From: Perkinsela sp. CCAP 1560/9
Taxonomy: Eukaryota > Protista > Euglenozoa: Kinetoplastea
Assembly (NCBI GenBank): GCA_965644495.1
Contig: CBFFSA010000001.1
Coordinates: forward strand, 3,720,001 to 3,784,000
Direction of reading: 5' to 3'
Length of the DNA stretch: 64,000 bases
A program made the position numbers and the translations under genes. Under the pieces are notes generated by a model. It searched no databases, had not been told where the DNA came from, and saw nothing but the letters and a program-made list of their open reading frames with translations. Shown here piece after piece: positions 22,174 to 60,187 of the stretch (positions are counted from its first letter, which is position 1; each line of letters opens with the position of its first letter).

Positions 22174-22203
22174 TAATAAAGATACAGTTTCTGTACCTTG
22201 TTG
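22174..22203 (+). other. Spliced-leader (mini-exon) relic, SL nt ~10-39
   Basis: ACAGTTTCTGTAC core followed by 7 nt ending in TTG, in exact register with the 39-nt trypanosomatid SL. Not followed by a GT donor. Confidence 0.85.
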
Positions 22204-22243
22204 AATTATTTTTCAATTTTGTACTAAACGTATCTTCCGGAGC

Positions 22244-25200
22244 ATGGCCTCCAATGACCCCTTACCTGCTCCTGTCGCGCACGACGACCTCCCTCGAGGA
22301 TCTGTCAGCGCGAGGCGACACAGTCAAGCGTTTCACTTTAGCAGAAGTCGCGCAGTATCTATGAAGCTGCGCTTATCAGAAAGCACACTCTGGTCTTACT
22401 TTCCTGACACACATGCAGCAGCTGTTTTCCTTACCGAAAAGAGTTTATTCTCGAGCGTACACACGGCTGAAGCTTCCCTCGGTAAGACCCTCCGAACAGG
22501 AGCCAAAAGAGATGATGGCTTAGTCATCGAGAAATGCAACCTGCAAGAAGTTATCGATCATGAAGCATGTGACTACGTGGAGTACCGAGAAATACAGGAC
22601 CCCCATCGAATCTTCCGGCACGCGAGCTGGGCCTCAGCGTACAGCGACGAACACTTGGATCTTTGTTCTCACTATGCCTCCGCTCAGACATTTGGAAAGG
22701 CAGTTCTGAAGAAACTAAATGGGTGCAACGTACCCGGTCTATCCCATCTTTCAGTACGACATATAGCCCCTGTTAACCAGACGGAGAACCAGTCTTGGAA
22801 CCGATGTTCAATCACATTCGACGCCCCTTACAAAATCAGAGCCGGTGATCACTCCCTACCACTCCTCAACAAACCCGACAAAACTCCCATGCCCTGTGCC
22901 CATCGATGCCGCAATAAAGCAACATGCCTACATCCATGCTGCAAAATTATCGACACGACACCTGCCACCGCAGACCCAACCTTAACAGACGATGTACCTT
23001 TCACCCAACCAATGACGACAGTCAACCCAAGCACTCCTGTCATGAATCCTGAAAGACGTCCCTGTCGGCACACATGTCGAGACAAACAGGCATGTGGACA
23101 TATATGCTGCAAAGTGGGAGTACTCGTTGAACAGAGTACGTCTACGCACACACATCATGAGGCGCCATCCAGAGCGGGAGTTCCTCATAACCACTTCCCT
23201 CCTCCCTTAGTTAACACCCGTAACCACCCCGCTACGCCGTCTGCAGGAATAGAGAGCCCGGGGTCCGGCGATTCTCGTGCACCCCCATCACCAATACCAA
23301 CCAATCCTGAGCACGTGAACCTGCGCAACTCGACATCCAACATCCAGTACCGTCCGTGCCTGCACCAGTGTAGTGACAAAACGATGTGTAAACATCAATG
23401 TTGCAAAACTGGGGTTCGTGTCTCCCCAGAGGAGGCAACGAACGCGAGATGGTCACTAAGGGGTCTTCTTCCCTGGCCTAACCAAAGTTCCAATGCCCCG
23501 ATAACGACGAGGGCCTCGTCAACGGAGAGAAATATCACAGCTGAGACCCTTCGAGACGACGGAAATAGGCAAAGACAAATCCAGCAAATGGAACACCCAA
23601 CAAGTAATACAGGACGCGAAACCGGGCTCCCAGAAAGCACACCTCAAAGTACCAGTAGCGGAGTACTGCAAGGAGAACGACGCCGTCCATGTGCGCATAA
23701 ATGCAATGACAAGACACAATGCAAGCACGATTGTTGTAAAAAGGGGGTGCTTCTTAAAGCTGGAGAGATGGTCTGCTCTGCGCTACTATGGACAGCGCGT
23801 GGACTCGCTGGTATCCCAGACAACCCTCCGATAGCGCGCGATGCTCCCGTGACGCAGTCAACTGTTCGAACCGAATCAACAGAGTCCACGAGAAGGATAA
23901 ATCACACTCGGGTGAATCCCGGTGAATTCCCAGTGTATGTAATTCCTAAGTCTCCCGAACAGCAACAGGTGCAGGAAACCACGGAAGTTCCCCTTCCATT
24001 ACCTCTATCAGCCCCCGATACCTCCCTAGCAACACTGCTCCCAGAAACAGTCCTCCGAGCAACGGCTCCCGATACGACACCTGCGCAAGAATACCAAACA
24101 ATACTTCAGAGAGTCGCACGAGCTCATGAAGCTACCGAGAGTTCTACACCTACGCCCTCTGAGCTTGACATTCTGTTGCGGACATCACGCACTATTGCGG
24201 GGGGCCGCGCACTGGTGCGCTTCAATGACCAGCAGTGGAGCCAGGTATTATCAAAGATTGAGGTGCGCTGTAGGGAGTTCCTGCGACCTGCAACGAACGC
24301 GGACGATGCACTGCTTAAAGCGGATATACTATCGGCCATACTGTCGGTGTCTGTCTTCGAAATCGCTCAAGAGATTGACCCTAGGCGAGGTTTCATGCTC
24401 CGTACAAACATGGGCCACGCAAAACGCGGATTGCGCCCACTGGCCATAGACAGAACACAAAAACAGCTTGTTGCACACATTCGCCAACTAAAACGTTCAC
24501 TTGCCTTCATGCATGGCGCAGAGCGCAACAAGCAGAGAGGGATGATCAAGCAAGCAGAAAAGGCGCTGAAGTTCTACGAAGAAGAAGCCACTCTTCAGAA
24601 ACAAGAAATCGAACGCAGATGGGCCCTCACCCGTTTCCAGCGAAATCCCTGGACAGCCGCTGGTATGTGTCTGGATAGCCATGAGGAAGAGGCGCGTGAA
24701 CACGGTACAACCTTCCCAACAGCGTCCATGAGTGAAATCGAAACCTTCTTTGCGGAGTCTATGTCTAAACCCGAGACCAACTATACCATTCCATCCGACG
24801 AGTTCCTTGGCCCACGCCCGCTAGAATCCATGAATTGGACAGAAATTGATGCCGGTACTATTGCTGCTGCATTGGTCTCGAAACGGGCAGGCGCCGCTCC
24901 GGGATCAGACACCGTGACGAATGCACTTCTGAAACGTTGCTCAAGCATCTACATCTATATCGCACAAATTTTTAATGATGTCCTTCAATTCGGTATCTGC
25001 CCACTTACGTGGAAAACTGCTGTAACCCGACTGATACATAAAGGTGGCGATCCTAAGCGCATCGAAAATTGGAGGCCAATTAGCCTCACCAGCTGCCTTG
25101 GAAAGCTCTTTCACTCCATTATTGGACACCGAATCCTTCAACACGCCCTGGAGACGAATGCGATCGACACAACTATCCAGAAAGGCTTTCTTCCTGGTAT

Positions 25201-27118
25201 GAATGGAACGGTAGAGCACACTCAAGCCCTATGTGAACTCATTGAGCACCAACGAAGCCATAAACGGCAATACTGTCTTTCCCAGTTCGACATTAAGAAC
25301 GCATTCGGATCGATCCCTCATAATATTCTCTTCCAGTCTCTCCGTTGGGCCCGCGTCCCCTCACCCATCATCCAATACATTGAAAACCTTTACCATAAGG
25401 CCTCTCTCCAAATCAAATGCAGTGAAGGACTCACCAAACCAATCGAAGTCGGACGGGGCGTACTACAAGGTGACACTCTCTCCCCAGTACTATTCAACCT
25501 CTCAATGGAGTTGGTGCTGCGTTTTGTCCGGTCTAGCTGTCCAAAATACGGTATTACATGGAACGACGACGAGGTGTTCCTCAAGGCTTTCGCCGACGAC
25601 CTTACCATTCTCACGAACACTCCCAAAGAAATGCAAAACGCGACCCATGTTTTGGTGAAAGCTTTATCCCGTGTAGGAATGAGGCTCAATGTGCAGAAAT
25701 GCAGGATGCAACATATGGCAATGACTACAGACTCAGGTTACATGACTCGCCGCCCGCAGATATTGGTCGATGGCGCCCAAATCCCCCACATTTGCGACCA
25801 AGGCAGCACATTCTTAGGAATGACACTCGCCCCGGGAGCCCAACAAGGGAACATTCTCTTCCAAAAGTTGCGGGCCCGCATACGCACGTGGTTACGAAAT
25901 ATATCTAGCAGCGCCCACGAACTACCGGCCCGTTTATGGATCTACAACAATGGTATTATCTCCCGTCTTCGATACTGCTTTGTTGTGCACGCGTGTCTTA
26001 GTTTTAATCACGTCCTGCGCCTTCAAAGGTATGCAACGAATGCGATTCGGAAATGGCTAAATCTCGCAAAAACGGCTACCAGCGAGCTCTTATACTCCCA
26101 ACACGGTTGGAACCTCACCAGCCTATCCAAACTTTGGCTCCTCTGTGCAGCAGAAACGGCGAAACAGATGGAAAAATCCCGCGACCCCGCGGTTCTGCAT
26201 GCATTGCGCGTCAGGATACGGAGGGAAGAAAACAAACGGTCATCTGGACATGTACGCCCACCTTCCGAAATCTACAGCACAGATAGAAGTGAAGTACGAA
26301 GAATGATTGGCGAGGAATATGAGAGACACCTCTGCCAAGCAGTACAGCGCCGTACCTCTGTTGCCGGTCAATGGTTCCGCATAGCAACCGAAGAAGACTT
26401 AGCTAAGGACTTTGCCGCAGCACTTTGTGATTTGAAAAGCGAGAGCCTCTCGCGTTTCACAGCCTCCGTCCTGACACAAACTCCCTTGCCGACACGAGTA
26501 GCACTCCGCAAATGGGGAATGTCGAGCCACGTAAACGACGAATGTCCCATATGTGAAACAGAGCGGCAAAGCACCCGGCACGTTCTCTCTGGCTGCGCGA
26601 AATCCTTAGAGCAAGGGAGATACACCCTGCGACACAATATGATCTTACTAGCCCTCGCAAACGCTGTAGCGACCTCTCCGTCGACGAATGCGTTCCATTT
26701 CGATCTTCCACAGTTTTCCACTGTCCCGACTTGGCTCACGGAATTAGATACAGAGCTCAGACCGGACGGGTGGGTAAGGCTGCATAATGGTGAGGAATAC
26801 ATAATAGAGCTAACTTCTCCATGGGAAGAGAACTTTTCACACGCCCACGACCGCAAAGTTGCGAAATACTCCAGGTTGTATCATACAAGGAAACTGCAAC
26901 ACCCACGCACGTTTCTCTTGGTGTTCGAGGTGGGTGCCAGGGGGAAACTTGCTAGCTCCATTCGACTGCTCAACTCTCTTTTTATGGGAGAAAAACATAT
27001 TGTTTCTGAGTGTCGGAAGGAAATGACGAGAAGTGCCCTGCGTGGCAGCTTCATCATATTCCAAAAACGCGACTCAAAGACCTGGAACAATGAAACACAG
27101 TTTGCTGAGGTCGCCTAA
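22244..27118 (+). CDS. Retrotransposon polyprotein: 4 zinc fingers, reverse transcriptase, CCHC knuckle, restriction-like endonuclease
   Basis: RT motifs APGSD, NWRPISL, QKGF, DIKNAFGSI, GVLQGDTLSPVLF, AFADDL. Then CPIC...HVLSGC, GRYTLRHN, RPDG..IIELTSPWE, K..KY, FEVGARG. Confidence 0.95.
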   Translation: MASNDPLPAPVAHDDLPRGSVSARRHSQAFHFSRSRAVSMKLRLSESTLWSYFPDTHAAAVFLTEKSLFSSVHTAEASLGKTLRTGAKRDDGLVIEKCNLQEVIDHEACDYVEYREIQDPHRIFRHASWASAYSDEHLDLCSHYASAQTFGKAVLKKLNGCNVPGLSHLSVRHIAPVNQTENQSWNRCSITFDAPYKIRAGDHSLPLLNKPDKTPMPCAHRCRNKATCLHPCCKIIDTTPATADPTLTDDVPFTQPMTTVNPSTPVMNPERRPCRHTCRDKQACGHICCKVGVLVEQSTSTHTHHEAPSRAGVPHNHFPPPLVNTRNHPATPSAGIESPGSGDSRAPPSPIPTNPEHVNLRNSTSNIQYRPCLHQCSDKTMCKHQCCKTGVRVSPEEATNARWSLRGLLPWPNQSSNAPITTRASSTERNITAETLRDDGNRQRQIQQMEHPTSNTGRETGLPESTPQSTSSGVLQGERRRPCAHKCNDKTQCKHDCCKKGVLLKAGEMVCSALLWTARGLAGIPDNPPIARDAPVTQSTVRTESTESTRRINHTRVNPGEFPVYVIPKSPEQQQVQETTEVPLPLPLSAPDTSLATLLPETVLRATAPDTTPAQEYQTILQRVARAHEATESSTPTPSELDILLRTSRTIAGGRALVRFNDQQWSQVLSKIEVRCREFLRPATNADDALLKADILSAILSVSVFEIAQEIDPRRGFMLRTNMGHAKRGLRPLAIDRTQKQLVAHIRQLKRSLAFMHGAERNKQRGMIKQAEKALKFYEEEATLQKQEIERRWALTRFQRNPWTAAGMCLDSHEEEAREHGTTFPTASMSEIETFFAESMSKPETNYTIPSDEFLGPRPLESMNWTEIDAGTIAAALVSKRAGAAPGSDTVTNALLKRCSSIYIYIAQIFNDVLQFGICPLTWKTAVTRLIHKGGDPKRIENWRPISLTSCLGKLFHSIIGHRILQHALETNAIDTTIQKGFLPGMNGTVEHTQALCELIEHQRSHKRQYCLSQFDIKNAFGSIPHNILFQSLRWARVPSPIIQYIENLYHKASLQIKCSEGLTKPIEVGRGVLQGDTLSPVLFNLSMELVLRFVRSSCPKYGITWNDDEVFLKAFADDLTILTNTPKEMQNATHVLVKALSRVGMRLNVQKCRMQHMAMTTDSGYMTRRPQILVDGAQIPHICDQGSTFLGMTLAPGAQQGNILFQKLRARIRTWLRNISSSAHELPARLWIYNNGIISRLRYCFVVHACLSFNHVLRLQRYATNAIRKWLNLAKTATSELLYSQHGWNLTSLSKLWLLCAAETAKQMEKSRDPAVLHALRVRIRREENKRSSGHVRPPSEIYSTDRSEVRRMIGEEYERHLCQAVQRRTSVAGQWFRIATEEDLAKDFAAALCDLKSESLSRFTASVLTQTPLPTRVALRKWGMSSHVNDECPICETERQSTRHVLSGCAKSLEQGRYTLRHNMILLALANAVATSPSTNAFHFDLPQFSTVPTWLTELDTELRPDGWVRLHNGEEYIIELTSPWEENFSHAHDRKVAKYSRLYHTRKLQHPRTFLLVFEVGARGKLASSIRLLNSLFMGEKHIVSECRKEMTRSALRGSFIIFQKRDSKTWNNETQFAEVA

Positions 27119-27230
27119 AGGTGAATGGATACCACACGTTCTGTGCGTGTGTTCTGGACATTTTATTTTCCTGTATCCATTCATAACCAATCTCTGCACT
27201 ATAAGTGTATGACAAATAAATAAATAAATA

Positions 27231-27622
27231 AATTGTATATGAATCGTTTCCACGGACGCCTTGATGTAAGCCTTCTTCCGGCGGGCATAGAGGTCATCAG
27301 TTTCGGTTCGAACAGTTTTGAAGGAAAGTTTGATTTTTCTACTTTACCTACAGCGTTGACGTCGGTCATGATTGGTAGGAACCAATTAAGCGGTTGCTTG
27401 AACGTTTTAGTGCTACCTTCTGAATTACAGACTTTATGGATAGAAGAAAATTTCTTTGACGGAATAGTGAAGCTTGATTTATTGCGGCTTCAATGCGCGA
27501 ATTTGATTGCATTTAAAATACATGATAACTATTTTACTATAGAAGGAAACTCGACCAAGCACGCTTGGATTCTGCACCCGCAAAAAGTAGGTAAAAGAAG
27601 TAGTAAAAAAAAGATTCAGTAA
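27231..27622 (+). pseudogene. LRR gene, 3' part, resuming after the retrotransposon
   Basis: LYMNRFHGRLDVSLLP continues the LRR broken at 22173. Confidence 0.85.
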
Positions 27623-28015
27623 GACGGACCGCAATGTGTATAGGAATGGGAGCAATCGAAATAATACTACTGTAACTACATACTCAATACTACTGTGACT
27701 ACTGTGTGTACGGGCCGTTTGGCCGAAATCCGCGGCACTAGTGGGGGGCACAGAGTGTATTGTAATCTTGCATGGGAGTACGTACTTTTACAACAATATA
27801 TGGCTTTTAATTAATAGATGATTCATACTATGTACTATACGTATGTAGGGTTCCATTGCGGTGGTTGTAAAACTACCGCTCTACACTCGATTATTGAAAA
27901 AAAAGTGAACAAAAACAGTGAAAATATAAAGAGGAACACAGTAATATAATAGAAGAAAAAAATATAAAAGGGGGCTCCGGTGGTCCAAAACTGAAAATTT
28001 TTTTTGAAAAAAATA

Positions 28016-28088
28016 GGGGGTCCATGGGGGGGGTCCATGGGGGGGGTCCAGGGGGGGGGTCCAGGGGGGGGGGTCCAGGGGGGGGGGG
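28016..28088 (+). repeat. G-tract tandem repeat (G7-10 TCCA)n, potential G-quadruplex
   Basis: Six G runs separated by TCCA(T), set within palindromic A/T tracts of a probable TE relic (~27846-28680). Confidence 0.8.
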
Positions 28089-28680
28089 CATGGTCGAGCA
28101 AATTTTTTCGAAAAAATTAGTTTTCGAAAAAAAACCGCAGAAAGGGTAGCCGGGGTCTTGGCGCGCATTTTCCACCCCCCTACCCGGGGGTGACCCCCCC
28201 GCGTATCCGCAGGACGGGTCCGCCAAGTTCGGAATTTTTCGGAAAAATTTTTTTGAAAAAAATTTCAACTTGGCGAAAAAAATGACAAAAAAAATATTTT
28301 TCCAAAATCGTTTCCCCTATTGTATTTTGATAGTTTGGGACCTACACTAGCTTTCTACGCAGTTGTTTTCGCAAGGTATCACTTCTTCGAACTGTGGTGC
28401 GCCCCTCAAAATGACCCATTTTTGACTAAAAAAGGTGAAAAAGTATTTTTCGGACCTAAAGGGGCATTTTTGTGTCGAAAGAATGGTATGGTTGGAGTCG
28501 CATTCTCTACCCAATACGTTCAGTAGGCTTTCATTCATGCCTGCGAGTGATTTCCCACGCGCAAATGTCGGATTTAGTGCTCTGAGAGCAAAAATATGCG
28601 AAAATGACCCCATTTGTACCCGAAATTCGGCTATTTTTGGCTATAATCTTTCCGTTTTCCCGGCTAAATTTTCTTTTTTA

Positions 28681-28775
28681 GGCTCTTCGTTAAACGCGGC
28701 GGTAGTTTTCAACGCGAAGCGCGCAGCACGAGTGACTTCTAAGTTGAAAGCAACCACCGCGTTTAACGAAGAGCC
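28681..28775. mobile_element. 95-bp fold-back MITE
   Basis: Perfect 19-bp TIR GGCTCTTCGTTAAACGCGG / CCGCGTTTAACGAAGAGCC, extending imperfectly to ~33 bp; TA-flanked. Confidence 0.8.
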
Positions 28776-28972
28776 TATATTATTCCGTGTGCGTGCATCT
28801 ACGGACACGTAGTGGAACTAGATGTCGTAGTTATGCAGTCAGGTAAACATACCTCAATCCATTCTTCGGTTAAAATACTACGAAAATAGTTGCTTGTCTT
28901 ACTTACAATAGTATAATTATCTTCTTAATTGTCTTGTATAATTATCTTCTCATAATTGTATAAGAAGACCCT

Positions 28973-29914: not shown

Positions 29915-30095
29915 AAACGAAGTTGTGGGTTCCCCTTTCAAAGTAACGTGCTCTTACCGTAACTGTGGAAGGTTATGGTGCTCTTGTGAGTTGTGTTTTG
30001 ATTATAAAACAATAATTTGTGATTGCATGATTTGGTAGTCGAGTTTCTATTGTATTTGCGAAAAAATATCCTTCTATATTCGCATTCTTTTGCCG

Positions 30096-31010: not shown

Positions 31011-31536
31011 GCACACCCCCTTTCATCAATAATGACCATTGAAACAAGATTTTCAGCTCGGGCTGTGAAAATTACTCAAAAATTATCGAAAACAAATCAT
31101 ACTATCTTTTTGACGCGGGAGTTTTCCCGTGATCTCTTTAATCTTGTCTTGTTTTCCCCTTCGTAGACAAAGTATCATACACAGATGTAAGCTTATTTCA
31201 GCTCTTCCCTTATTGCGTTCATAAATTGTCGCTGTGGTAGCTGTTTTGTCAAAAAGCGGTAATCGCGTTGTGTAAGTGCACGTAAGCTCGGTTTCGCAAA
31301 TTGCTTCCCACTACCGATTCCGCGTATGGCTCAGGCCCTCTCACGCGGGCCCTCGCCATGCCCCACTCCGGCTTCGTAAATTGTTTCCCACTAACGACTC
31401 CTTTTTGGCAAAACGGACAGTGGGTTCGAACCAGCAACCAACGCACATTCTAATGTGTGGTATGTGCCACTGGACCAATCCGGCCAGACATCGTGGACCC
31501 ATGCTTCTCGGCTCCTCCCTACGTAGCCGTACGAAA

Positions 31537-31617
31537 ATACCGTTAGTGGGAATCGAACCCAACCACCTTAGATATACATGTAGAGTCACTGGGCCTAACG
31601 ACTAGGCTAATAACACC
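31537..31617 (-). pseudogene. tRNA-like sequence (A/B boxes, D and T arms; no anticodon stem)
   Basis: Minus strand reads TAGCCTAGTCGTTAGGC (A box, GCCT/AGGC D stem) ... GGGTTCGATTCCC (B box, T arm), with a partial acceptor stem GTTA/TAAC. Confidence 0.55.
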
Positions 31618-31678
31618 GTAAAGAAAGAAGCAGAGGTTGTAAATAAATCTGGTTGTAATTAAATCTCAGAAAAAAAAA

Positions 31679-32344
31679 TCATTATCATTATTGTTAGAGA
31701 GTGTGTATTGCATCATCCATCAATCTTGAATGCGAACATTTGTACTTTGATATACACAGGGCGAAAACCTGTAGAGATACTGGGCTCAGCAGAGGTTGAC
31801 GCAAAGGGCGCTCCCTGCTGAACCTGTCGCCTTCCTCTGCTACACCGAGAAAAGTACGGAATGTCCGCCGAGGGGGAACGAAAAGAACGGCTTCATCGGG
31901 TTAAGATGTCCCGATACGGGAAGAGAGCGTAGTCCTGCCATACGAATTCGTAGGACGCGGATGGTACTCCCATCGTACATGCTACAAATGACTTACATGG
32001 TTCATGATACAACATGGTCAAGGCCATGGATACATGCTGGCAAATGGAATGCCACGGTTCATGATGCATCATGGTCATCGGGGTCCCACCGAGTTCGCCT
32101 CGGCTGGTGAGCAAGGGAGGTGTCATAGAGCATCCTCTGCACGCATAGTGCGTAGAATACGCATACGACGTGTTCGCTAGCCGTGTGGGAATGAGACAAG
32201 GGAAGCGCACACCTACTTTATGATAAGAGGGACAGTTTCGATTCCAGCACCGTCCGGAAACGGGCACGTAAAAGTGTTCCCGTTTCTGGGAGAGAAAAGA
32301 CGATCTAGAAAAATGTATCAACATGGTACAGAAACTGTATCCTT
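31679..32344 (-). mobile_element. Putative SL-headed non-autonomous retroposon or retrocopy of a structured RNA
   Basis: Minus strand starts AAGGATACAGTTTCTGTACCATGTTG (32344-32319). Hairpin-rich body with no convincing ORF. Ends in AATAATGATAATGAT; the 3' boundary is tentative. Confidence 0.6.
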
Positions 32345-52256: not shown

Positions 52257-52544
52257 TATGTAAGGGGGGATAGTATTTAGGAAACTTGCGGATCGCGTTT
52301 CAGAGCACTTTGATAAAAGGATAAGGCCCCCCTTGTGCTAATTTTGGCCATGCTGCATTCACGAGCCCTGTTCGAAAGCTCTGGAATGCACTATTTGTAT
52401 CGAAAACAAATGTATTGTAAACAAATAAATTTTACGAATTTTAGACCCCTCACGTTAAAAAAGGTTTCCCCCCTGCATTTGTTCAGATTATGCTACTTAT
52501 TTTTTGAGTTTCCTTATTACTTTAGTTCAGCTCTCACTTACAGA

Positions 52545-53148
52545 ATGTGTGACGTTCCGGCTTCAAGGCCGCGCCTGGCTAAGATTCGAGGCACAGCTCT
52601 TCCGCAAGAGTACGATCTAGAGAGACTCGTTGCCGGTATTCCCGATCCACATAGCTCCTGGACGGCAGACACTCCGGTTTGTGAGTGGGATGGCGTAATA
52701 TGCATGTCGCGCGGCACACCCACATCACTCCGTTGGTCATCGCATGCCTCGCGTATGAAAGGTGGAACTGTGTATTTGCAGTTTATGCCGGTTTCCATTC
52801 AAACGTTTTCTGTACCGAGCTGTGGGCTTTTCGGGGGAAGTTACATTCGGATTACTTCCTCGGCATCTTAATTATCTTTATCTCCAAGAAAATAAGTTTA
52901 CTGGAGAATTACAAGTTAGCGACCTTCCGGACATGATTATTGAGCTCAATATTGTAAAAAACCAATTTCATGGCAAGGTTGACCTCGTTTCAGATTTAAA
53001 TGAAATTGTACCGAAAAGTTTGATCGCCATGCAAGTAGGCCAAAATGTGGATCTTTTTGGTACAATCAATGTTGCTTTGCTTCGAAGATGGAAATCATCC
53101 TTTATGTACGATGTCAGTGGGACAAGCATTAGACGAGTAACGAAATGA
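52545..53148 (+). pseudogene. LRR gene with +1 frameshift at ~52829-52837 (could be a homopolymer error)
   Basis: RLAKIRGTALPQEYDL motif and cap in one frame; GEVTFGLLP LRRs continue in the next frame. Confidence 0.75.
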
Positions 53149-53549
53149 CAATCCAGCTCTAAATTCACAGTGATTCATACACTGTAGTATTGTTATTTAC
53201 ATTGAGATGACAATATTTTTATGTACATTGAGGCGATCTTTATTTTTTGTTTATGATTCAACCATTCTTGTGGTAATACTGTCCCCTCTATTTAGCGTAT
53301 TTTATTCCACTATTTAGTGTTGTTTTTTAGCTTTGTGAGCATTGGTGCCGGAAAGGCGTCGAATGTCCTTACCCCCTATCTAGTGTTGAATTTCGATTAA
53401 TTTCTTTAAACATTAAATTATTTAAATAATATTTAAAATATGAGAGATAGTCATTTATACGCTGTCAGGTATTTTGTTTGTGTCCGAAATGAAAGCATAT
53501 GTAAAAATTGTTTTTTTATTTCTGTCTTCTTCTGACAATTATTCGTCTA

Positions 53550-53831
53550 ATGAGTGCTCAGGAAGAACCCAAAAAACCTGTCATTAAAAATGTTGACATG
53601 ACAGAAGAGATGCAAGGAGATGCGATTGCTACTGCTAATGAAGCATTGGATAAATTCAACATTGAAAAGGACATAGCAGCACACATTAAGAAAGAATTTG
53701 ATCGAAAACACAACCCAACTTGGCATTGTGTAGTCGGACGCAATTTCGGTTCTTTTGTTACACATGAGACGCAACATTTTATTTACTTTTACGTAGGGCA
53801 GATTGCAGTGCTGTTGTGGAGATCAGGTTGA
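53550..53831 (+). CDS. DYNLL1: Dynein light chain LC8
   Basis: [41 protein letters not shown]. Confidence 0.97.
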
Positions 53832-54297
53832 ACAGCATGTATTTTTATCATTTGATAGTGTAAATTGCATGCTTGGATAAAAGGAATGCTCTTGTCGTTT
53901 TTCGATTTATTATCTAGGATATTGGCCTAAGAAATTTAGCACGCGATTTTTAGTCATACTTTCTTAGCGTTATTGCATTGTTCTCAAGCAGAATGGTTTA
54001 TTTTCTTAATTATTTTTTTTCGTGTATTGTTCACATAATAAACTACTCGGTTGTTACGACTTTGGCAACTCGTGTTTATTTGCACGCGAGTAAAAAGTAT
54101 AACGCGATGATAGCGTCAACTATAAAGTAGCAGCATCCTCAATGCATTTCATGGATTAATTTTGAGAATGTGTACTGTTCACTGTAGTAATTTGTGTATG
54201 ATATTTTTGCACCAAAATATTTGCCTTTCTTATGAGGTAGTGCATGTGAAAAATATCTTTACTCTTGCGCAATTATTTGTAGCGAATACCACCCCTT

Positions 54298-54690
54298 ATG
54301 CTATTGTCCAGAATTTGTTTGCCACCGACACTCTCCAGGTCGCAAACTGTGCGAAATCATTCATCGAAGGCGTTGCCTTGTGTTCTGTATAGTTCATCCG
54401 TCCGTCAAATTCAAACACGCGATCCAAACTATGAAGATGATCGATGGCTGGAGGCTGAACTTGCAAACAAAGAAATGTCTGCAGAAGAACGCTATGCATT
54501 CTTAAAGCAACGTGAAGTTATTAAGCAAATGATGTCCAAAGTAGCAGATCATGCTAAAGAAAAGGCGAATGCAGAAAATAACGTGTCCAAATCTGAAGTG
54601 GACTTGTCACGCAATGACTTAGAAAAGAAAATTACCGCACTAGAGGCCGAAGTGGCAAGGCTAAAGCTTGAAGAAAAGAAGCCACTATAA
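54298..54690 (+). CDS. IF1: Mitochondrial F1-ATPase inhibitor IF1 (kinetoplastid type)
   Basis: Presequence-like N-terminus, DDRWLEAEL...EERYA...QRE, C-terminal coiled coil. Confidence 0.7.
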   Translation: MLLSRICLPPTLSRSQTVRNHSSKALPCVLYSSSVRQIQTRDPNYEDDRWLEAELANKEMSAEERYAFLKQREVIKQMMSKVADHAKEKANAENNVSKSEVDLSRNDLEKKITALEAEVARLKLEEKKPL

Positions 54691-55238
54691 GCGCAAATAT
54701 TACTTTAAACCTTTACCGCGCTGAAAATTGTTGAAATCGTAATTCTTTAATCCAAATGTGTGGCTCAGCATGGCATACATCATTCTACGGTAACTTTCTA
54801 GTGTCCAAAATAATAATTTTTGCCTTTCCCCTGTATATTTGTAATTTCCTTATTCGTTTCTTTTATAATATGCTTAGTGTTTATTCCTTATTGCGTATTA
54901 TATCGTAAGCGCACATGTAGTATCGCGCACTAGATACATCATGAAATTACTGTCTATAAGTAAATCACCGTAACATTTCATGTTCGAAATATACAGTAGA
55001 TATCCCCAGACGTTTTTATTGATCCGTAAATCATTTGTTTGTTTTTTAGACCTCACCCTTTAAAAAAATATTAGTATTATACTATTTCGTACTATAGGCG
55101 GTTACATTTTTGTTGGGTGTCAGGCGTCACTTTCTTACCATAATGCATTGGCGGCGTGATACGTTCTGTTTGAATACAAAAAATATTCAAAACCGTATTT
55201 TAGAGAGAGCTATTTATTTAATAAGGAAGGACTCTTCC

Positions 55239-55841
55239 ATGAATGGTATTTTCGCGGCTGAATTAGCACCTGCTTGCGCAGCCAAAGTACGCGGCGCTGC
55301 AGTACCGCCGGAGTATAATTTAGTGAGACTCACGCAACGCATCGAAAATCCGAAAGAATCATGGCACACGAATACACCTGGATGTGAGTGGGATTTCGTT
55401 TCCTGTAATGAACAAGGCGATGTGATCAACATTACGTGGATTTTCATTGGCTTACAAGGATCACTTTGTTGGGAGTATTTACCAAAACAACTTATGATTC
55501 TTAGCCTTACGGGAAATCACCTTAAAGGGGAAATACCGCTCTCGGATATGCCTTATGACCTCGAGTTCATAAATATGGGAGAAAATGAGTTTGGCGGCAG
55601 CATCGAGTTACAGCATCTTCCGCCGACCTTGGAATATCTTTATTTGCATGACAATTTATTTGATTGTCAGATTAAGTTTACCTTATTGCCGAAAAGTCTC
55701 CTTGAACTCGTTTTGCACAAAAACGGTAAACTGCGAGGGGAGCTTGATGTTTCATTACTACCGGAGTCCTTAAAGTACAATATGCGCAATACAGGAATCA
55801 CCGCTTTGAACGGCCCTACTCGCCGAGGATTTTCTTTGTAG
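55239..55841 (+). CDS. LRR protein
   Basis: AKVRGAAVPPEYNL motif, CEWDFVSC cap, 4 LRRs. Confidence 0.9.
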   Translation: MNGIFAAELAPACAAKVRGAAVPPEYNLVRLTQRIENPKESWHTNTPGCEWDFVSCNEQGDVINITWIFIGLQGSLCWEYLPKQLMILSLTGNHLKGEIPLSDMPYDLEFINMGENEFGGSIELQHLPPTLEYLYLHDNLFDCQIKFTLLPKSLLELVLHKNGKLRGELDVSLLPESLKYNMRNTGITALNGPTRRGFSL

Positions 55842-55913
55842 CCTGCCTCAATGTCAAATTCTTTTTATGTCAATAAAGGCGCAGACTTCAGATCATATAT
55901 TTTTTATAGTGTA

Positions 55914-56195
55914 CAGGGGGGACATTTGTCTGTGTAATACTAATCTGGAGAACATTAATCTGTGTGATATTAATCTGTGTGATATTAATCTGTGTTAACT
56001 CGAAAATATTTGGTCCGGCAGAAATCTGTGCTAAAAAAACAAAAATGCGCCGCAGGCGAAATTTTCCTGTTTTAGTAAATGTTTTTTTTCTCTTTTCTTG
56101 ATTTTTAATTGTAAAAATGGACAAATTTGTGAAAAAAGATCATAGCCCCGGCATAGAGGGGGGGCGTTTATCCGTGTAAAATCTGTGAGATCATA
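55914..56195. mobile_element. MITE-like remnant with 15-bp subterminal repeats
   Basis: TA-CAGGGGGGAC start, then (ATTAATCTGTGTGAT)n. The right terminus is not clear. Confidence 0.4.
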
Positions 56196-56673
56196 GTACA
56201 TATTTTTATACGCCACATAGTACCTATTTTTATGCACTGTATAGTTCTTTCTATACTATTCAGGTATCATCCTCGATCAGAATAACTTAAGATGATGTTC
56301 CGATAGTTTACAACCGTCCATCCATAGTATTTCTCTCCTGCAAATAACAAACCGTTAGTCGTACAATCTGTTTTTCGGAGCAAAGAACTTCACAAAACAA
56401 CAGATCACTTTCGTCCGTCTTCCTCAAACCTCTCCAATTGCCAAAACTGAACATCGATATTTACATGCAACGGAACATCGCAGAACTCTCGGGATGTAAA
56501 CATGGAACATCACAAACCACCCCTTTGTAAATATTTTTGCAGCAAATCCTTTCACATTCCTAGACTACTCCAACTCTGAGCTTATCCGATCATGTCATCA
56601 TCTCCTTTCACTTTTATTATTCCTACAGTAAGTCCGTGTTGCATCCCTTTCAAAAATCCTTTTGACACATTCT

Positions 56674-57774
56674 CTCGTAACAACGCGAGGTCGTCAGTCC
56701 CGGGTAATAGGGTGGGTGGATCCAATGCAAGTACCGACTGTCATCAACACGATGTCAGTCACTCTCAGACGTCAAGCCATCTCCGTATGGTGAATGCGGA
56801 ATAAACGGATGAGTCTCCCGTGCCACACAAGGTGGTACATGTTCTCGCAACAATGCGAGGTCGTCAGTCCCGGGTAATAGGGTGGGTGGATCCAATGCAA
56901 GTACCGACTGTCATCAACACGATGTCAGTCACTCTCAGACGTCATGCCGTCTCCGTATGGTGAATGCGGAATAAACGGATGAGTCTCCCGTGCCACACAA
57001 GGTGGTGCGTGTTCTCGCAACAACGCGAGGTCGTCAGTCCCGGGTAATAGGGTGGGTGGATCCAATGCAAGTACCGACTGTCATCAACACGATGTCAGTC
57101 ACTCTCAGACGTCAAGTCGTCTCCGTATGCTAAATGCGGAATAAACGGATGAGTCTCCCGTGCCACACAAGGTGGTGCATGTTCTCGCAACAACGCGAGG
57201 TCGTCAGTTCCGAGTAATAGGGTGGGTGGATCCAATGCAAGTACCGACTGTCATCAACACGATGTCAGTCACTCTCAGACGTCATGCCGTCTCCGTATGG
57301 TGAATGCGGAATAAACGGATGAGTCTCCCGTGCCACACAAGGTGGTGCGTGTTCTCGCAACAACGCGAGGTCGTCAGTCCCGGGTAATAGGGTGGGTGGA
57401 TCCAATGCAAGTACCGACTGTCATCAACACGATGTCAGTCACTCTCAGACGTCAAGTCGTCTCCGTATGCTAAATGCGGAATAAACGGATGAGTCTCCCG
57501 TGCCACACAAGGTGGTGCATGTTCTCGCAACAACGCGAGGTCGTCAGTTCCGAGTAATAGGGTGGGTGGATCCAATGCAAGTACCGACTGTCATCAACAC
57601 GATGTCAGTCACTCTCAGACGTCATGCCGTCTCCGTATGGTGAATGCGGAATAAACGTATGAGTCTCCCGTGCCACGCAAGGTGGTGCGTGTTCTCGCAA
57701 CAACGCAAGGTCGTCAGTCCCGGGTAATAGGGTGGGTGGATCCAATGCAAGTACCGACTGTCATCAACACGATG
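56674..57774. repeat. 170-bp tandem array, ~6.5 units, hairpin-rich
   Basis: GGATCC recurs at 56718, 56888, 57058, 57228, 57398, 57568 and 57738. Confidence 0.97.
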
Positions 57775-57776
57775 AT

Positions 57777-60187
57777 GTTTCTGTACCTTGTATTTGTTTT
57801 CTTAAACTGTATCAACAACATGTCCGTTAATCTCACTTCCCCGCGGAATGTTGACAATGCGTTGCCGGACCTCCCTCGAGCTTCCGCTGCGTACAGACGC
57901 AAACACTGCATTTCGTCCACAGCAGATCTCGACCCGTTAAGATACGACTTCTCACTGATCTGCGCTGGACATATTTCCCCGACATTAAGGCTGTCAGCCA
58001 ATGGTCCATAGTTAGAGAAAGAATCCCATCCGGGCAAGGTGCGGAAATAGCGATTACAAAACTATTAAATAAGCATCAGCACACGCCCTGGTAGCTGAAC
58101 ACGCCAGGTCACGAGGAAAGAACACCCCCACACCACCTCCCTGCACCCAAACTGGGTTTCGATGCATGCAGATCCGACCCTGAACCTAGGAAAGACGTAT
58201 TCCACCCCAAGCACGCTCAATAAAGCAGCCGTGAAGGCCTTATAGGGTAGAGAAATATGTGGATTGAAACACATAACAATAGAGCTCATAAGACAGAAGG
58301 AAAGATCACCAAGCGCTGAACCAACGGGATACGAAAAACCAAGCAGGACAGAAGAATCTCCGCACAAAATCGCTGCTCCACGAACGTCCCTGAAAGGTAA
58401 ACCTGATGAATACAAAGGACCATGCAAACACCGCTGCTTGAGAAAACTCTCCTGTGTGCACAAGTGCTGCAAAATACGTATACAGGGGTGAAAACTGCCA
58501 TCTGGGGGGGTCTAAAATTAGCAAAAACTTTTCAATTTCGGAAAATAATACCGCATTCGAGAGCTCTCGCAGAGTTGTATGTCTTTGCACTGGTAGCTGC
58601 TGACATATCAAATTAGAACTCCAAATACCGAATAGGCCAAAAAAGCAAATTGTCACTTAAAGAATAATAAAAAATCTCAGATATTTTTAGGAGGCATTAT
58701 TTTAAAACCCGTGTTGCATCCACAACATGCACCCTTCTTTTCTACGATGATTCTACAACGTATTCCGAAGTTTTTAAACTTATTATCAAACTTATCTTTG
58801 TCTTTTGCCTGAAGTTTATCGTAAAAAACATGAATCGTTCCACCCAGAGTTTCACAGTTCCCTAGTGGACCCAAACACTTTGGTAAGTCCGGGAATAAGA
58901 CTGTATTTTCTCGAAGTCGGCCACAAGAAGTAATCTTTGGTGTTCTTTAATCTTTCCTGGCAAAGTATAAGAACGGGCGTTCGAAACACCATGAGAATTC
59001 CTTGAGCGAACTCGCTTTTGGGGCGTAAAATGGGGCAAAAATGAAAAATTGCCATATTTTCACAAGAAAAAAAACATGTTTTTTTCTCATCGGGTTAAAT
59101 CTTTCAAGCCGAGCGTTCCGAATACGCCAAAGACATACAACTCTGCGAGATCTCTCCAATGCGCTATTATTTTCCAAAATTGGACAATTTTTACAAAATT
59201 TAGACCCCCCCCCAGATGGAAGTTTTCACCCCTGTACTTGTATGTACCGTTGCCAAGTGTGGACGCTCAGGACAACTTATCAACGAGAGCACCACCACCT
59301 GATGTCCAAGCAGGAACCGCAAACCCCACCATCCTCGGGTCATGTGAGAAGGAAGAGGAAGAAAGAGGAAGAAATCAATCTTGATCTTTCAAGATTAGAT
59401 TCACAAGAAGAATCAGAGATCCTCTTTCTTCCTCTTTCTTCCTCTTTCAAGACTAGATTCTTTCAGAATCTTGATCTCCTCATCATGTGCCACCCTCTGG
59501 CGCGACTCCTAGAAATGCAACACTTCACTCACTGAACACCGCACGAGTAGAACCATGCCGTCACCGATGCTCCGCCAAGTTATGCTGTCTGCACAACTGT
59601 TGCAAAATATATGGACCACTCAGGTGCAATGAACCCCTCGTCCGACCTTCTCCTCTCCCCCCTGTTTCGCACACTACGGAAGGTCGAGTTCCATCGTGGG
59701 ATGAAACAAACGAAAAGGAACGCCTTCGTCTGCTTGAACAACACAAATCCATAGCAGGAGGGAAAATGTGTCTAAAGCTTAACGACGACCAATGGAAAGC
59801 CGTCGAAAATAAGGCATACGATGCATGCCGAAGAATACTACATCCCATAGTAGACACCCCGGAAATCGCCGTCAAAAACGCAGAACTCTTGGGGGTCCTC
59901 TATGGCGGTGGCGGTCTATGAAATTGCACATGAAATAAATCCCACCAAAGGTTTCCTCACACGATCGAATCGCGGACACGCCCGATTTAAGCACCGACCT
60001 CTTTCCTCTGAAAATGCAGCTCATCAAATGGCAAAACACATACGCAGCCAAAAGAAATCACTACGCTACACGCACGGAACGGACCGCCAAGAGCTCCGTC
60101 GCTGCATTAAGGAAAGCGAGAAACTAGAGAAAGTATACTCAGAAGAGGCCAAAGCTCATAAAACACAGCTAGAGAGGCATTGGGCCC
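57777..60187 (+). mobile_element. Decayed, 3'-truncated relative of the RLE retrotransposon, SL-fragment-headed
   Basis: Starts GTTTCTGTACCTTGT, ATG at 57820. Homologous blocks: DLPRAS, PCKHRC..CVHKCCK, PCRHRC..CLHNCCK, IAGG...LNDDQW, YEIAHEINPTKGF, LERHWA. Contains stops and frameshifts. Confidence 0.85.
58483..59234. mobile_element. Complete 752-bp non-autonomous Tc1/mariner-type element (CAGGGGTG family)
   Basis: ~105-bp imperfect TIRs, TA duplication (58481-82, 59235-36); inserted into the decayed retroelement. Confidence 0.92.

What the first reader, a model, noticed from the sequence alone, without database searches (positions are those of the whole stretch)
22174..57791. SL-headed retroelements: three independent insertions begin with a spliced-leader mini-exon relic
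Seen: 22174-22203 (+) reads TAATAAAGATACAGTTTCTGTACCTTGTTG, exactly at the 5' junction of the intact retrotransposon. 57777-57791 (+) reads GTTTCTGTACCTTGT at the 5' end of a diverged relative. 32344-32319 (-) reads AAGGATACAGTTTCTGTACCATGTTG, heading a non-coding element. None is followed by GT, so none is an SL RNA gene. Known: the 39-nt kinetoplastid SL has ACAGTTTCTGTAC followed by 7 nt ending TTG, the same register. CRE/SLACS/CZAR and NeSL elements are tied to SL genes by inserting into them. Inference: this dispersed family has its 5' end defined by trans-splicing, and the SL is reverse-transcribed into each new copy. That would let a promoterless element be cut out of polycistronic RNA without an ingi/L1Tc-type ribozyme-promoter. 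AG dinucleotides inside the relic could serve as acceptors in the next round, as described for dinoflagellate SL relics. Alternative: a formerly SL-targeted element that carries its 5' flank.
Basis: partly seen in the sequence, partly recalled or inferred. Interest (0 to 1): 0.92.

Follow-up and report, generated by a model that had tools for sequence, protein, structure and literature searches.

The report
Retrotransposons headed by spliced-leader relics
In this kinetoplastid genome a whole superfamily of jumping genes, three of them in this window, begins with a copy of the cell's own spliced-leader mini-exon, which suggests they multiply through trans-spliced RNA, a signature so far documented mainly for dinoflagellate retrogenes.

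Summary
The motif is nt 11-38 of this organism's own 38-nt spliced leader (SL). The SL RNA gene (G000:C1:661 kb) reads the same exon followed by GTATGAG.

- **Element 1 (22174-27230):** an intact 5.06-kb non-LTR retrotransposon with RT plus a CCHC/PD-(D/E)XK endonuclease (R2/CRE/NeSL type). It split an LRR gene and left a 6-bp target duplication.
- **Element 2 (57777-60195):** a decayed relative.
- **Element 3 (32344-~31745, minus):** a ~0.6-kb non-coding partner that shares the LINE's 3' end.

All 36 related copies examined begin with the SL exon joined exactly at its donor end to the element's 5'UTR, mostly from SL nt 11. A second class of poly(A)-flanked units carries almost the whole SL, often with snap-back palindromes. 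Stacked relics (56) start mostly just after TG/AG dinucleotides of the SL.

Best reading: the transcripts are trans-spliced and the SL is reverse-transcribed into new copies. Direct RNA proof is lacking. The nt-11 boundary equals the CRE/SLACS/CZAR insertion site, so an SL-gene-ancestry rival stays alive. The Perkinsela genome paper noted SL fragments near retrotransposons without explaining them. First-stage readers flagged the same on other windows of this genome.

The parts
21813..22173 (+). 5' part of the interrupted host LRR-protein gene (…LNMSDNGLTGPVDFAYLPGCLKEL), ending in the 5' copy of the target-site duplication AATTGT (22168-22173)
   Evidence: the open frame runs up to the insertion; the same hexamer recurs at 27231-27236
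22174..22175 (+). two extra nucleotides (TA) between the target duplication and the relic
   Evidence: they match neither the SL (CG at these positions) nor the target
22176..22203 (+). SL relic of element 1: SL exon nt 11-38, 28/28 identical to the SL RNA gene exon
22204..22243 (+). 5'UTR of element 1 (AATTATTTTTCAATTTTGTACTAAAC…), conserved among subfamilies
22244..27118 (+). single intact ORF of 1624 aa: N-terminal Cys-rich repeats, RT domain (aa 937-1184), and a C-terminal CCHC + RHN…E…RPD…E restriction-like endonuclease motif (aa 1434-1522)
   Evidence: best solved relatives are R2 proteins, E 1e-31
27119..27213 (+). 3'UTR ending in the family's conserved terminal motif ATCTCTGCACTATAAGTGTATGAC (27190-27213)
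   Evidence: the motif is shared by all LINE subfamilies and by the SINE-like family
27214..27230 (+). (AAAT)n simple-repeat tail of element 1; there is no poly(A)
27231..27620 (+). 3' copy of the target duplication AATTGT (27231-27236), then the continuation of the host LRR gene (…Y MNRFHGRLDVSLLPAGIEV…)
57777..57793 (+). decayed SL relic of element 2 (SL nt 22-36, with 2 mismatches at the 3' end)
57794..60195 (+). element 2: a degenerate, 3'-truncated copy of a different LINE subfamily. It is 72-87% identical in pieces to protein P0005 aa 1-703. It has frameshifts, one stop and a ~1-kb internal gap (58476-59475). No RT domain is left.
32319..32344 (-). SL relic of element 3 (SL nt 16-38 with 1 mismatch; the AAG upstream may be nt 13-15 with a further change)
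31745..32318 (-). body of element 3, a ~0.6-kb non-coding SINE-like retroposon ('family a', closest copy L025 at 77-80%). It ends in the LINE-type 3' motif ATCTCTACAGG…CCTGTGTATATCAAAG (from 31778 downward).
   Evidence: no protein homology

Best explanation
The motif is the 3' 28 nt of the organism's own 38-nt spliced leader. The organism is a kinetoplastid whose nearest named relatives are the prokinetoplastids Papus and Perkinsela.

The window holds three members of one retroelement system:
- an intact autonomous non-LTR retrotransposon with RT and a restriction-like endonuclease;
- a decayed relative;
- a short non-coding partner that shares the LINE's 3' recognition end.

Proposed cycle:
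1. A genomic copy is transcribed passively within a polycistronic unit.
2. Its RNA is cut out and capped by SL trans-splicing.
3. The element's RT copies this RNA by target-primed reverse transcription, from the 3' motif and simple-repeat tail through the 5'UTR into the SL.
4. Each new insertion therefore begins with SL sequence that ends exactly at the SL donor site.
5. In this endonuclease class the copy usually stops or is trimmed at SL nt 10/11, in the loop of the SL's 5' hairpin.
6. In the next round, splice acceptors inside or at the end of the relic (TG38, TG28, AG22, AG16) can be used. This either regenerates the same SL|UTR junction or stacks partial relics.

Shown:
- the identity of the relic with the SL;
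- the exact exon-end junction in every copy;
- insertion-specific 5' extents;
- the TSD and restoration of the host reading frame;
- the shared 3' ends of LINE and SINE-like elements;
- the relic stacks.

Inferred:
- that the elements' transcripts are trans-spliced;
- use of TG acceptors in this species;
- the cause of the nt-11 boundary.
For: **The SL gene.** A 38-nt exon is followed by GTATGAG and a strong intron stem-loop, as a tandem pair with a 297-bp period.

**The junction.** The relic|UTR junction lies exactly at G38 in all 36 LINE/SINE copies, although the downstream 5'UTRs differ completely between subfamilies: AATTATTTTCAA…, TTTTCTTTTCCC…, ATTTATTTTCCCC…, T15GTAC…, GTACATTTTCC…. The relics are almost always mismatch-free, even in subfamilies only 32-54% identical in protein.

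**Insertion-specific 5' extents.** Near-identical young SINE-like copies (98%) have different relic starts (nt 15, 11, and 11 plus duplications). A few copies reach nt 8 or further. So the template RNA extends beyond nt 11 and the boundary is set at each insertion.

**Shifted junctions.** In two pairs of sister subfamilies the intact SL is joined 9-12 nt further into the UTR (L049 against L048; L054 against L052), with no microhomology. This is what alternative acceptor use would produce.

**Unrelated SL-headed units.** Poly(A)-flanked units carry the SL from nt 1-3, often with templated snap-back extensions of the SL 5' hairpin, for example the 46-nt perfect palindrome at C1:3218555. This shows that SL-bearing RNAs are reverse-transcribed in this genome.

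**Stacked relics.** There are 56 stacks and 0 controls; ~33 begin after TG28, ~10 after AG22 and 2 after AG16, and 17 sampled TG28 stacks have diverse downstream UTRs.

**Precedent in a relative.** In Perkinsela, TG is the acceptor 26% of the time and AG only 27%. An L1Tc-like transcript carried an SL. More than 500 SL fragments are dispersed, 24 of them next to retrotransposon sequences (PMC5601477).

**No alternative 5'-end signal.** No ribozyme or other Rfam family matches at the 5' ends.

**Probable RNA contigs.** X4 contigs carry SL+AATTATTTT… at their ends.

**Element 1 is a bona fide recent insertion.** It has the TSD AATTGT, the host LRR frame reads through (…KEL-Y-MNRFHG…), and a 98-99% identical copy lies on contig 51.
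Against: - There is no direct RNA evidence. The only probable RNA run has no contig on the element body. Because the genome already encodes relic+UTR, SL-UTR contigs do not prove splicing.
- Retro-copies have lost the canonical AG at the original junction. Regenerating SL|UTR needs a TG acceptor, which is known only from a relative.
- If the template carries the full SL, the sharp 5' boundary is not explained by trans-splicing. It falls at nt 11 in 21/36 copies, at nt 10-13 in 28/36, and never below nt 8. It coincides exactly with the CRE/SLACS/CZAR insertion site (nt 11/12 in T. brucei numbering; PMC5814959).
- The SINE-like family continues GTA(C/T) after the relic, matching 3-4 nt of the SL intron.
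- All subfamilies could have inherited one ancestral junction, so the many junctions are not independent events.
- No relic-less 'master' copy was found, so relic-bearing copies must themselves be the sources.
Confidence: 0.62

Rival explanations
1. The relic is an inherited 5' arm from an SL-gene-targeting ancestor. A CRE-like element that inserted at SL nt 10/11, with a target duplication running to the exon end, acquired SL nt 11-38 as its upstream flank. Its RNA has included that stretch ever since, much as R2 RNAs carry upstream 28S sequence. The family later retargeted to LRR genes. On this view the relic is transcribed as part of the element, is conserved because it is functional, and is not renewed by trans-splicing.
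For: The modal relic start (nt 11; 21/36 copies) aligns exactly with the CRE/SLACS/CZAR insertion site between nt 11 and 12 of the 39-nt SL. CRE elements always make target duplications, with the second nick downstream. The endonuclease has the CRE/SLACS-type CCHC…RHN…E…RPD…E motif. The SINE-like family continues with GTA(C/T), like the SL intron. At C1:1778 kb a LINE tail abuts nt 11 of a SINE relic, so the LINE is flanked on both sides by SL nt 11-38, as an insertion into an SL target would be. No relic-less master copies were found.
Against: - None of the 36 copies sits in an SL gene or has SL nt 1-10 as its flank, and the few SL genes are uninterrupted.
- Element 1 has a 6-bp LRR-gene duplication and no SL at its 3' side.
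- Some copies extend to nt 8, or to about nt 3-6.
- Junction shifts in L049 and L054 leave the SL intact.
- Stacks occur after TG/AG dinucleotides in many unrelated UTR contexts.
- Relics stay perfect while the UTRs diverge.
- It gives no mechanism for defining an RNA 5' end at nt 11 in dispersed, promoterless copies; no ribozyme was detected.
Confidence: 0.25
2. The SL is added at the reverse-transcription step rather than by splicing of the element RNA. R2-type RTs can jump end-to-end between templates. After reaching the 5' end of an unspliced or processed element RNA, the RT jumps onto the 3' end of a free SL exon (the trans-splicing intermediate) or of another SL-bearing RNA. That would fuse …TTG to whatever 5' end the RNA had.
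For: The best solved relatives are R2 proteins, whose template jumping is cited in PMC3636483. The commonest stack is SL+T29-G38, and T29 lies 2 nt inside the SL's second hairpin, a plausible RT stall point. 5' junction duplications of [flank + SL nt 11-19] occur in several copies.
Against: It requires the element RNA 5' end to be precisely and reproducibly defined by some other, unseen mechanism. It does not explain why stack boundaries fall after AG22 and AG16 as well as TG28. Trans-splicing of essentially all mRNAs is the established rule in kinetoplastids (general knowledge), and an SL-bearing retrotransposon transcript was found in Perkinsela.
Confidence: 0.06
3. Artefact: cDNA contamination or misassembly joined SL-bearing cDNA to genomic sequence.
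For: Short-read Logan contigs break at the SL and at the (AAAT)n tail, so the two junctions of element 1 are not independently bridged.
Against: There are 503 sites on chromosome-scale contigs, each with unique flanks. Element 1 has a target duplication and the host ORF is restored across the insertion. The same elements occur in a second public assembly. DNA runs cover element 1 at single-copy depth right up to both breaks.
Confidence: 0.01

Closest known systems
Dinoflagellate SL-relic retrogenes (retroposition of trans-spliced mRNAs, with stacked truncated SL relics)
   Same: Genomic copies begin with SL exon sequence that ends at the donor site. Stacked partial relics begin right after acceptor dinucleotides inside the previous relic. 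Poly(A)-flanked units occur in tandem (the phenomenon is reviewed in PMC5585692 and PMC12014239, seen).
   Different: Here the carriers include the autonomous retrotransposons themselves and their SINE-like partner, not only host genes. The host is a kinetoplastid. The commonest stacking acceptor is TG rather than AG. The LINE class shows a sharp truncation at SL nt 11 and has simple-repeat tails, not poly(A) tails.
CRE clade (SLACS, CZAR, CRE1/2), SL-gene-specific non-LTR retrotransposons of trypanosomatids
   Same: Kinetoplastid host; a single ORF with RT plus the CCHC/PD-(D/E)XK endonuclease motif (against the consensus in PMC12857005); an intimate link with the SL. The relic's first base corresponds to the base just 3' of the CRE insertion site (PMC5814959).
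   Different: CRE elements sit inside SL RNA genes and end in poly(A). These elements are dispersed, often in LRR genes; they carry the SL 3' part at their own 5' end, have 6-bp non-SL target duplications, and end in simple-repeat tails.
Perkinsela sp. 'SL RNA gene fragments' associated with retrotransposons (Tanifuji et al. 2017, PMC5601477, Suppl. Notes 1.2-1.4)
   Same: A related lineage with a 38-nt SL; more than 500 dispersed SL-like sequences against one or a few intact SL genes; 24 SL fragments adjacent to retrotransposon sequences; an SL on a retrotransposon transcript; hundreds of LRR genes; non-AG acceptors.
   Different: That report interpreted the fragments as decaying SL genes and stand-alone introns, found the neighbouring elements to be ingi-like, and left the link open ('worthy of further investigation'). 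Here the fragments are exon-only relics fused precisely to the 5'UTRs of RLE-type LINEs, their SINE-like partner and other units, with junction anatomy that points to a mechanism.
NeSL/Utopia and R2 (RLE non-LTR elements); R2 and L1Tc 5' ribozymes
   Same: RT plus a C-terminal RLE. The nearest named database relatives are animal R2/NeSL-like proteins, some with C2H2 fingers or a UCH protease. They depend on co-transcription with host sequence. The 5' junctions vary, with duplications.
   Different: There is no protease domain and no rDNA, SL-gene or U2 target. No HDV-like ribozyme was detected at the 5' end. The 5' end seems to be made by the host's trans-splicing instead.

Membership tests
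RLE-bearing non-LTR retrotransposons (R2 group: CRE, NeSL, R2, R4, Hero) | Single ORF with a reverse-transcriptase domain | tested here: met
   PF00078, E 6e-33, aa 937-1184 of the 1624-aa ORF; R2 proteins are the best solved relatives
RLE-bearing non-LTR retrotransposons (R2 group: CRE, NeSL, R2, R4, Hero) | C-terminal CCHC zinc knuckle followed by a PD-(D/E)XK restriction-like endonuclease motif (RHD/N…E…R/KPD…D/E), and no APE domain | tested here: met
   CPIC-x8-H-x4-C-x11-RHN…E…RPD…E at aa 1434-1522 (consensus from PMC12857005); no Exo_endo_phos hit
RLE-bearing non-LTR retrotransposons (R2 group: CRE, NeSL, R2, R4, Hero) | TPRT footprints: a defined 3' end with a tail, variable 5' junctions, and a short target duplication or deletion | tested here: met
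   Conserved 3' motif plus (AAAT)n/(AT)n tails; TSD AATTGT; 5' junction duplications and truncations
CRE clade (SLACS/CZAR/CRE1/CRE2) | Site-specific insertion into SL RNA genes between SL nt 11 and 12 | tested here: not met
   0 of 36 copies lie in an SL gene or have SL nt 1-10 upstream; the SL genes found are uninterrupted; element 1 is in an LRR gene
CRE clade (SLACS/CZAR/CRE1/CRE2) | 3' poly(A) tail | tested here: not met
   The tails are (AAAT)n, (AT)n, ATATGATA and similar
CRE clade (SLACS/CZAR/CRE1/CRE2) | RT-domain phylogeny groups with CRE references | not testable with these tools
   No CRE/SLACS reference sequences were returned by the protein search, and none may be typed in
NeSL/Utopia | Cysteine-protease (Ulp1/UCH-type) domain and an SL-exon or U2 gene target | tested here: not met
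   There is no protease domain in this ORF, although distant relatives at ~25% identity carry UCH; the targets are not SL or U2 genes
SL-relic retrocopies (retroposition of trans-spliced RNA, dinoflagellate type) | Genomic copy starts with SL exon sequence ending exactly at the donor site and not followed by the SL intron | tested here: met
   All 36 class-I copies and 11 class-II copies; the SL gene for comparison
SL-relic retrocopies (retroposition of trans-spliced RNA, dinoflagellate type) | Stacked truncated relics that begin after acceptor dinucleotides of the previous relic | tested here: met
   56 stacks genome-wide, about 45 starting after TG28, AG22 or AG16; none in the three window copies
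SL-relic retrocopies (retroposition of trans-spliced RNA, dinoflagellate type) | Transcripts of the source loci shown to be trans-spliced | tested here: inconclusive
   Only contigs were available. The probable RNA run X4 has SL-headed contigs but none on element 1.
SINE/LINE partnership (for element 3) | Short non-coding element sharing the 3' terminal sequence of an autonomous LINE in the same genome | tested here: met
   ~570-nt units, 98% identical among young copies, with no protein homology. Their 3' end AATCTCTGCACTATAAGTGCATGATAAA is almost identical to the element 1 3' end.

The most novel reading that the evidence does not exclude
SL-headed dispersed elements and SL-gene-specific CRE elements may be two states of one system built around the SL's 5' hairpin. 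The element's restriction-like endonuclease would recognise the SL sequence or hairpin and cut at nt 10/11. On chromosomal SL genes this gives CRE-type site-specific insertion. On the element's own SL-bearing cDNA it trims each new copy to start at nt 11. Because this lineage tolerates TG acceptors, the relic's terminal TG lets every copy be re-spliced at the same place. A promoterless retrotransposon would then use the host's trans-splicing both as its 'promoter/cap' and as a self-renewing 5' end.
Probability: 0.15. Interest if true: 0.85.

Novelty: new variant of a known kind. Interest (0 to 1): 0.72.

Why it matters
Kinetoplastid retrotransposons are thought to solve the 'no promoter in a polycistron' problem in one of two ways. 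Either they carry an internal promoter and ribozyme (Pr77/L1TcRz of ingi/L1Tc), or they live inside SL RNA genes (CRE/SLACS/CZAR).

This genome shows a third solution on a large scale. The element's 5' end coincides with a trans-splice junction, and the SL is written back into the DNA of every copy: autonomous LINEs, their SINE-like partner and other units.

- It offers an explanation for the unexplained 'hundreds of SL fragments' of Perkinsela.
- It extends the SL-relic phenomenon from dinoflagellates to Euglenozoa.
- It provides a natural tag for dating and counting retroposition events.
- The nt-11 boundary offers a testable bridge to the origin of SL-gene targeting by CRE elements.
- The stacked relics are an internal record of non-AG (TG) acceptor use.

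Tried and rejected
- **5' ribozyme or other structured RNA.** Rfam at gathering thresholds on the whole window, and at E≤5 on 22100-22600, gave nothing.
- **tRNA-derived SINE idea for element 3.** ARAGORN finds no tRNA in the window.
- **Element 3 as an SL RNA (exon+intron) retrocopy.** Its body does not resemble the SL intron beyond GTA.
- **Independent support for the junctions from reads.** Logan contigs of three DNA runs stop at the SL repeat (22174/22187) and at the (AAAT)n tail (27204/27242). This is uninformative rather than negative.
- **Expression of element 1.** The only probable RNA run (X4) has no contig on its body; no conclusion can be drawn.
- **Hairpin-opening origin of the nt-11 start.** A self-primed second strand opened in the loop would predict T before TAAAG. 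The copies have A, so this was rejected.
- **Master copies behind the SL promoter.** Only the two SL genes carry the promoter-proximal sequence exactly. Five 1-mismatch sites were not followed up.
- **TSD lengths of CRE1, SLACS and CZAR.** The original papers are not held. My recollection of ~29 bp for CRE1 and 49 bp for SLACS is unverified and is not used as evidence.
- **Paper searches** for the SL sequence, and for SL-headed retroelements in kinetoplastids, found no prior description other than the Perkinsela notes.
- **Limits of the session.** The two halves of the host LRR gene were translated separately and never joined.

Full report
**1. The observation**

The 11-mer GTTTCTGTACC occurs exactly three times in the window. 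With one mismatch allowed there are 5 matches against 1.13 expected, and no shuffle reaches 5. The two one-mismatch sites, at 19312 and 52806, are ordinary sequence.

**2. Is it the spliced leader?**

Yes. The window is G000:C1:3720001-3784000 of a 21-Mb, 110-contig assembly. ACAGTTTCTGTACC occurs 503 times in the genome and its reversed control never.

At C1:661 kb two tandem units (297-bp period) read …CCCTTGTT AACTTTAACGATAAAGATACAGTTTCTGTACCTTGTTG | GTATGAGAAGCTTCG…. The intron has a strong stem-loop, and the exon has a 5' hairpin (C3-A7 with U12-G16, loop A8-A11). So this is a 38-nt SL exon, the same length as in Perkinsela. Only two tandem and about three solitary copies continue with GTATGAG.

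In run X4, guessed to be RNA, contigs carry the SL within 3-30 nt of their ends, followed by diverse sequences.

The organism is a kinetoplastid. Its DHFR-TS is 61-63% identical to those of the prokinetoplastids Papus (PhM-4) and Perkinsela, which are the nearest named sequences. The same elements occur in an ENA metagenome assembly, ERZ24900291.

**3. Anatomy of the three window elements**

*Element 1* spans 22174-27230.
- It begins with two extra bases (TA), then SL nt 11-38 (22176-22203, 28/28 identical), then a 40-nt 5'UTR.
- One intact ORF of 1624 aa follows (22244-27118). It has an RT domain (PF00078, E 6e-33) and a C-terminal CCHC…RHN…E…RPD…E restriction-like endonuclease motif at aa 1434-1522 (consensus from PMC12857005).
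- There is no APE domain. R2 proteins are the closest solved relatives.
- The 3'UTR ends in ATCTCTGCACTATAAGTGTATGAC followed by (AAAT)4A.
- The element is flanked by AATTGT on both sides (22168-22173 and 27231-27236).
- The host LRR gene is open up to the insertion (…AYLPGCLKEL) and resumes in frame after it (Y-MNRFHGRLDVSLLPAG…). I translated the two flanks separately and did not join them.
- A 98-99% identical copy lies on contig 51. Element 1 is therefore a recent, genuine insertion.

*Element 2* (57777-60195) is a frameshifted, internally gapped, 3'-truncated copy of another subfamily. It is 72-87% identical in pieces to protein P0005, aa 1-703. It is headed by a decayed relic (SL nt 22-36).

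*Element 3* (32344 down to about 31745, minus strand) has no coding homology. It belongs to a family of ~0.6-kb units ('family a'). Young copies of that family are 98% identical over 570 nt and then diverge into unrelated flanks. The family's 3' end, AATCTCTGCACTATAAGTGCATGATAAA in one subfamily, is nearly identical to the 3' end of element 1. The window copy ends in the same motif type (ATCTCTACAGG…CCTGTGTATATCAAAG). It is therefore the SINE-like partner of these LINEs, not an unrelated element.

**4.

- A DNA search with the first 697 nt after the relic found 13 copies at 65-100% identity. All begin with the relic.
- A protein search with the N-terminal 300 aa found about 40 loci down to 32% identity, many with open frames of 1500-1860 aa.
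- Every further copy I could inspect also carries SL sequence fused at G38 to its own, different 5'UTR. These are the copies at C1:234 kb, C1:2443 kb, C10:385 kb, C11:217 kb and C1:3851 kb, and the two ENA contigs.

In a table of all SL-3'-end matches in the sequence held, 36 LINE or SINE-like copies have relics:
- starting at SL nt 11 in 21 copies;
- starting at nt 10-13 in 28 copies;
- starting at nt 14-28 in most of the rest (one at nt 8);
- never starting below nt 8.

Most relics have no mismatch. In the 100-site sample a few copies appear to reach nt 3-6, with an indel.

Near-identical young SINE-like copies have different starts (nt 15, nt 11, and nt 11 with duplicated [flank + nt 11-19]). 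So the boundary is set at each insertion.

**5. A second class of SL-headed units**

About 60 of the 100 sampled sites are unrelated units: gag-like zinc-knuckle ORFs, RNase H-like ORFs and unknown ORFs. They are often preceded by poly(A) of the upstream unit.

They carry the SL from nt 1-3 (8 of 11). Many have the SL 5' hairpin extended by templated snap-back:
- ATCTTTAACGATAAAGAT;
- CTGTATCTTTAACGATAAAGATACAG;
- a perfect 46-nt palindrome at C1:3218555.

This is what a first-strand cDNA folding back on the SL palindrome would produce. It shows that SL-bearing RNAs are reverse-transcribed into this genome.

**6. Stacked relics**

The pattern TACCTTGTTG…TACCTTGTTG within 22 nt occurs 56 times, against 0 for the control.

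| Stack type | Relic starts after | Count |
|---|---|---|
| SL + TACCTTGTTG | TG28 | ~33 |
| SL + TTTCTGTACCTTGTTG | AG22 | ~10 |
| SL + ATACAG… | AG16 | 2 |

In the 17 TG28-type stacks whose downstream sequence was listed, that sequence is diverse, so the stacks arose repeatedly.

I could not make sense of the TG boundary until I read that in Perkinsela AG is the acceptor only 27% of the time and TG 26% (PMC5601477). With TG acceptors, the relic's own terminal TG38 allows re-splicing at exactly the old junction. That removes the main objection that retro-copies have lost their AG. It also explains why relics remain perfect while UTRs diverge.

Two sister-subfamily pairs (L048/L049 and L052/L054) differ by an intact SL joined 12 or 9 nt further into the UTR, without microhomology. 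That looks like alternative acceptor use.

**7. What remains unexplained**

*The nt-11 boundary.* Aligned from the conserved 3' end, nt 10/11 of this SL is nt 11/12 of the 39-nt trypanosomatid SL. That is the insertion site of SLACS, CZAR and CRE (PMC5814959). It also lies in the loop of the SL 5' hairpin.

I give that about 0.25. Against it:
- no copy lies in an SL gene;
- element 1 has an LRR-gene duplication;
- some relics extend beyond nt 11;
- the junction shifts and stacks are better explained by splicing.

A synthesis is possible and testable: a CRE-type endonuclease that trims the SL-bearing cDNA at its ancestral recognition site.

*Target preference.* Nine of about 19 LINE copies, and several SINE-like copies, sit at the homologous position of an LRR repeat, 6-9 codons after its 'LP'. 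This indicates target preference.

*5' junction duplications.* Several 5' junctions show R2-like duplications.

**8. Comparison with what is known**

SL-relic retrogenes are well known in dinoflagellates (papers). The Perkinsela genome paper reported:
- more than 500 dispersed SL-like fragments;
- one intact SL gene;
- 24 fragments next to retrotransposon sequences;
- an SL on an L1Tc-like transcript;
- hundreds of LRR genes.

It left the link open. Searches found no description of kinetoplastid retrotransposons whose genomic copies are headed by the SL exon. A 2025 mobilome survey of 57 trypanosomatids lists only INGI, CRE, VIPER and TATE. I therefore rate this a new variant of a known kind.

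First-stage notes show that the same pattern was flagged on at least seven other stretches of this genome.

**9. Verdict**

The decisive RNA experiment is still missing. An SL-gene-ancestry component cannot be excluded and may in fact be complementary.

Noticed in passing
G000:C1:661301-661668 (L005/L006); C2:801591; C20:10933; C49:34375: Only two tandem SL RNA genes (297-bp period) and about three solitary SL+GTATGAG copies are in the assembly, against 503 SL 14-mers. Summed read depth over the SL is about 400 times the single-copy depth, so no large hidden SL array is evident. Perkinsela likewise has one intact SL gene.
   Followed up: partly
one search list, e.g. G000:C1:3218555-3218685, C4:410114, C1:1473629: Poly(A)-flanked SL-headed units occur in head-to-tail arrays. 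They have snap-back palindromes centred on the SL 5' hairpin and tandem partial SLs. They encode gag-like zinc-knuckle, RNase H-like and unknown ORFs, possibly separately retroposed cistrons of other retroelements.
   Followed up: partly
window 22120-22173 and flanks of L050-L055, L065, L067: The LINEs and the SINE-like family insert preferentially at one position of LRR-gene repeats, 6-9 codons after the 'LP' of a unit. Element 1 disrupts an otherwise open LRR gene (21813-22173 and 27237-27620).
   Followed up: partly
window 22870-23130 (ORF aa 210-296) and L061: The N-terminal part of the LINE protein contains repeated Cys/His motifs of the form C-x-H-x-C-x-N/D-K-x2-C-x-H-x-CCK, with no Pfam match. 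They repeat a variable number of times among subfamilies and may be the DNA-binding module.
   Followed up: no
window 27950-28300: An odd low-complexity block lies just downstream of the interrupted LRR gene. It holds tandem GGGGGGGTCCATGG / GGGGGGGGTCCAGG units flanked by A/T-rich 'TTTTTTGAAAAAAA' palindromic stretches.
   Followed up: no
window 31300-31620 (minus strand) and the 3' flank of L046: Sequences resembling tRNA T-arms (GGTTCGATTCCCAC, GGTTCGAACCCAC) lie next to retroelement insertions, but ARAGORN calls no tRNA. They may be tRNA-derived repeat fragments.
   Followed up: partly
window 38851 and 40061 (minus strand): Two copies of a small repeat begin with CCTTGTTG (SL nt 31-38) followed by (A)TT(A/G)TTCGATGCAGG…CCTGCAGATACAATTCG, in the spacers of tandemly duplicated genes. 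This could be a very short relic or chance.
   Followed up: no
L046 positions ~3728-4554 (G000:C51): The near-identical sister copy of element 1 is itself interrupted by a SINE-like family-a element, headed by its own SL nt 11-38 relic. This shows recent activity of both partners.
   Followed up: partly
G000:C1:2412728, C8:146578, C18:246029, C23:62592, C39:7440: Five sites read CCTTGTAAACTTTAACG, one mismatch from the sequence spanning the SL gene start. They could be SL 3' end + SL 5' end junctions (SL-to-SL joins) or variant SL genes.
   Followed up: no
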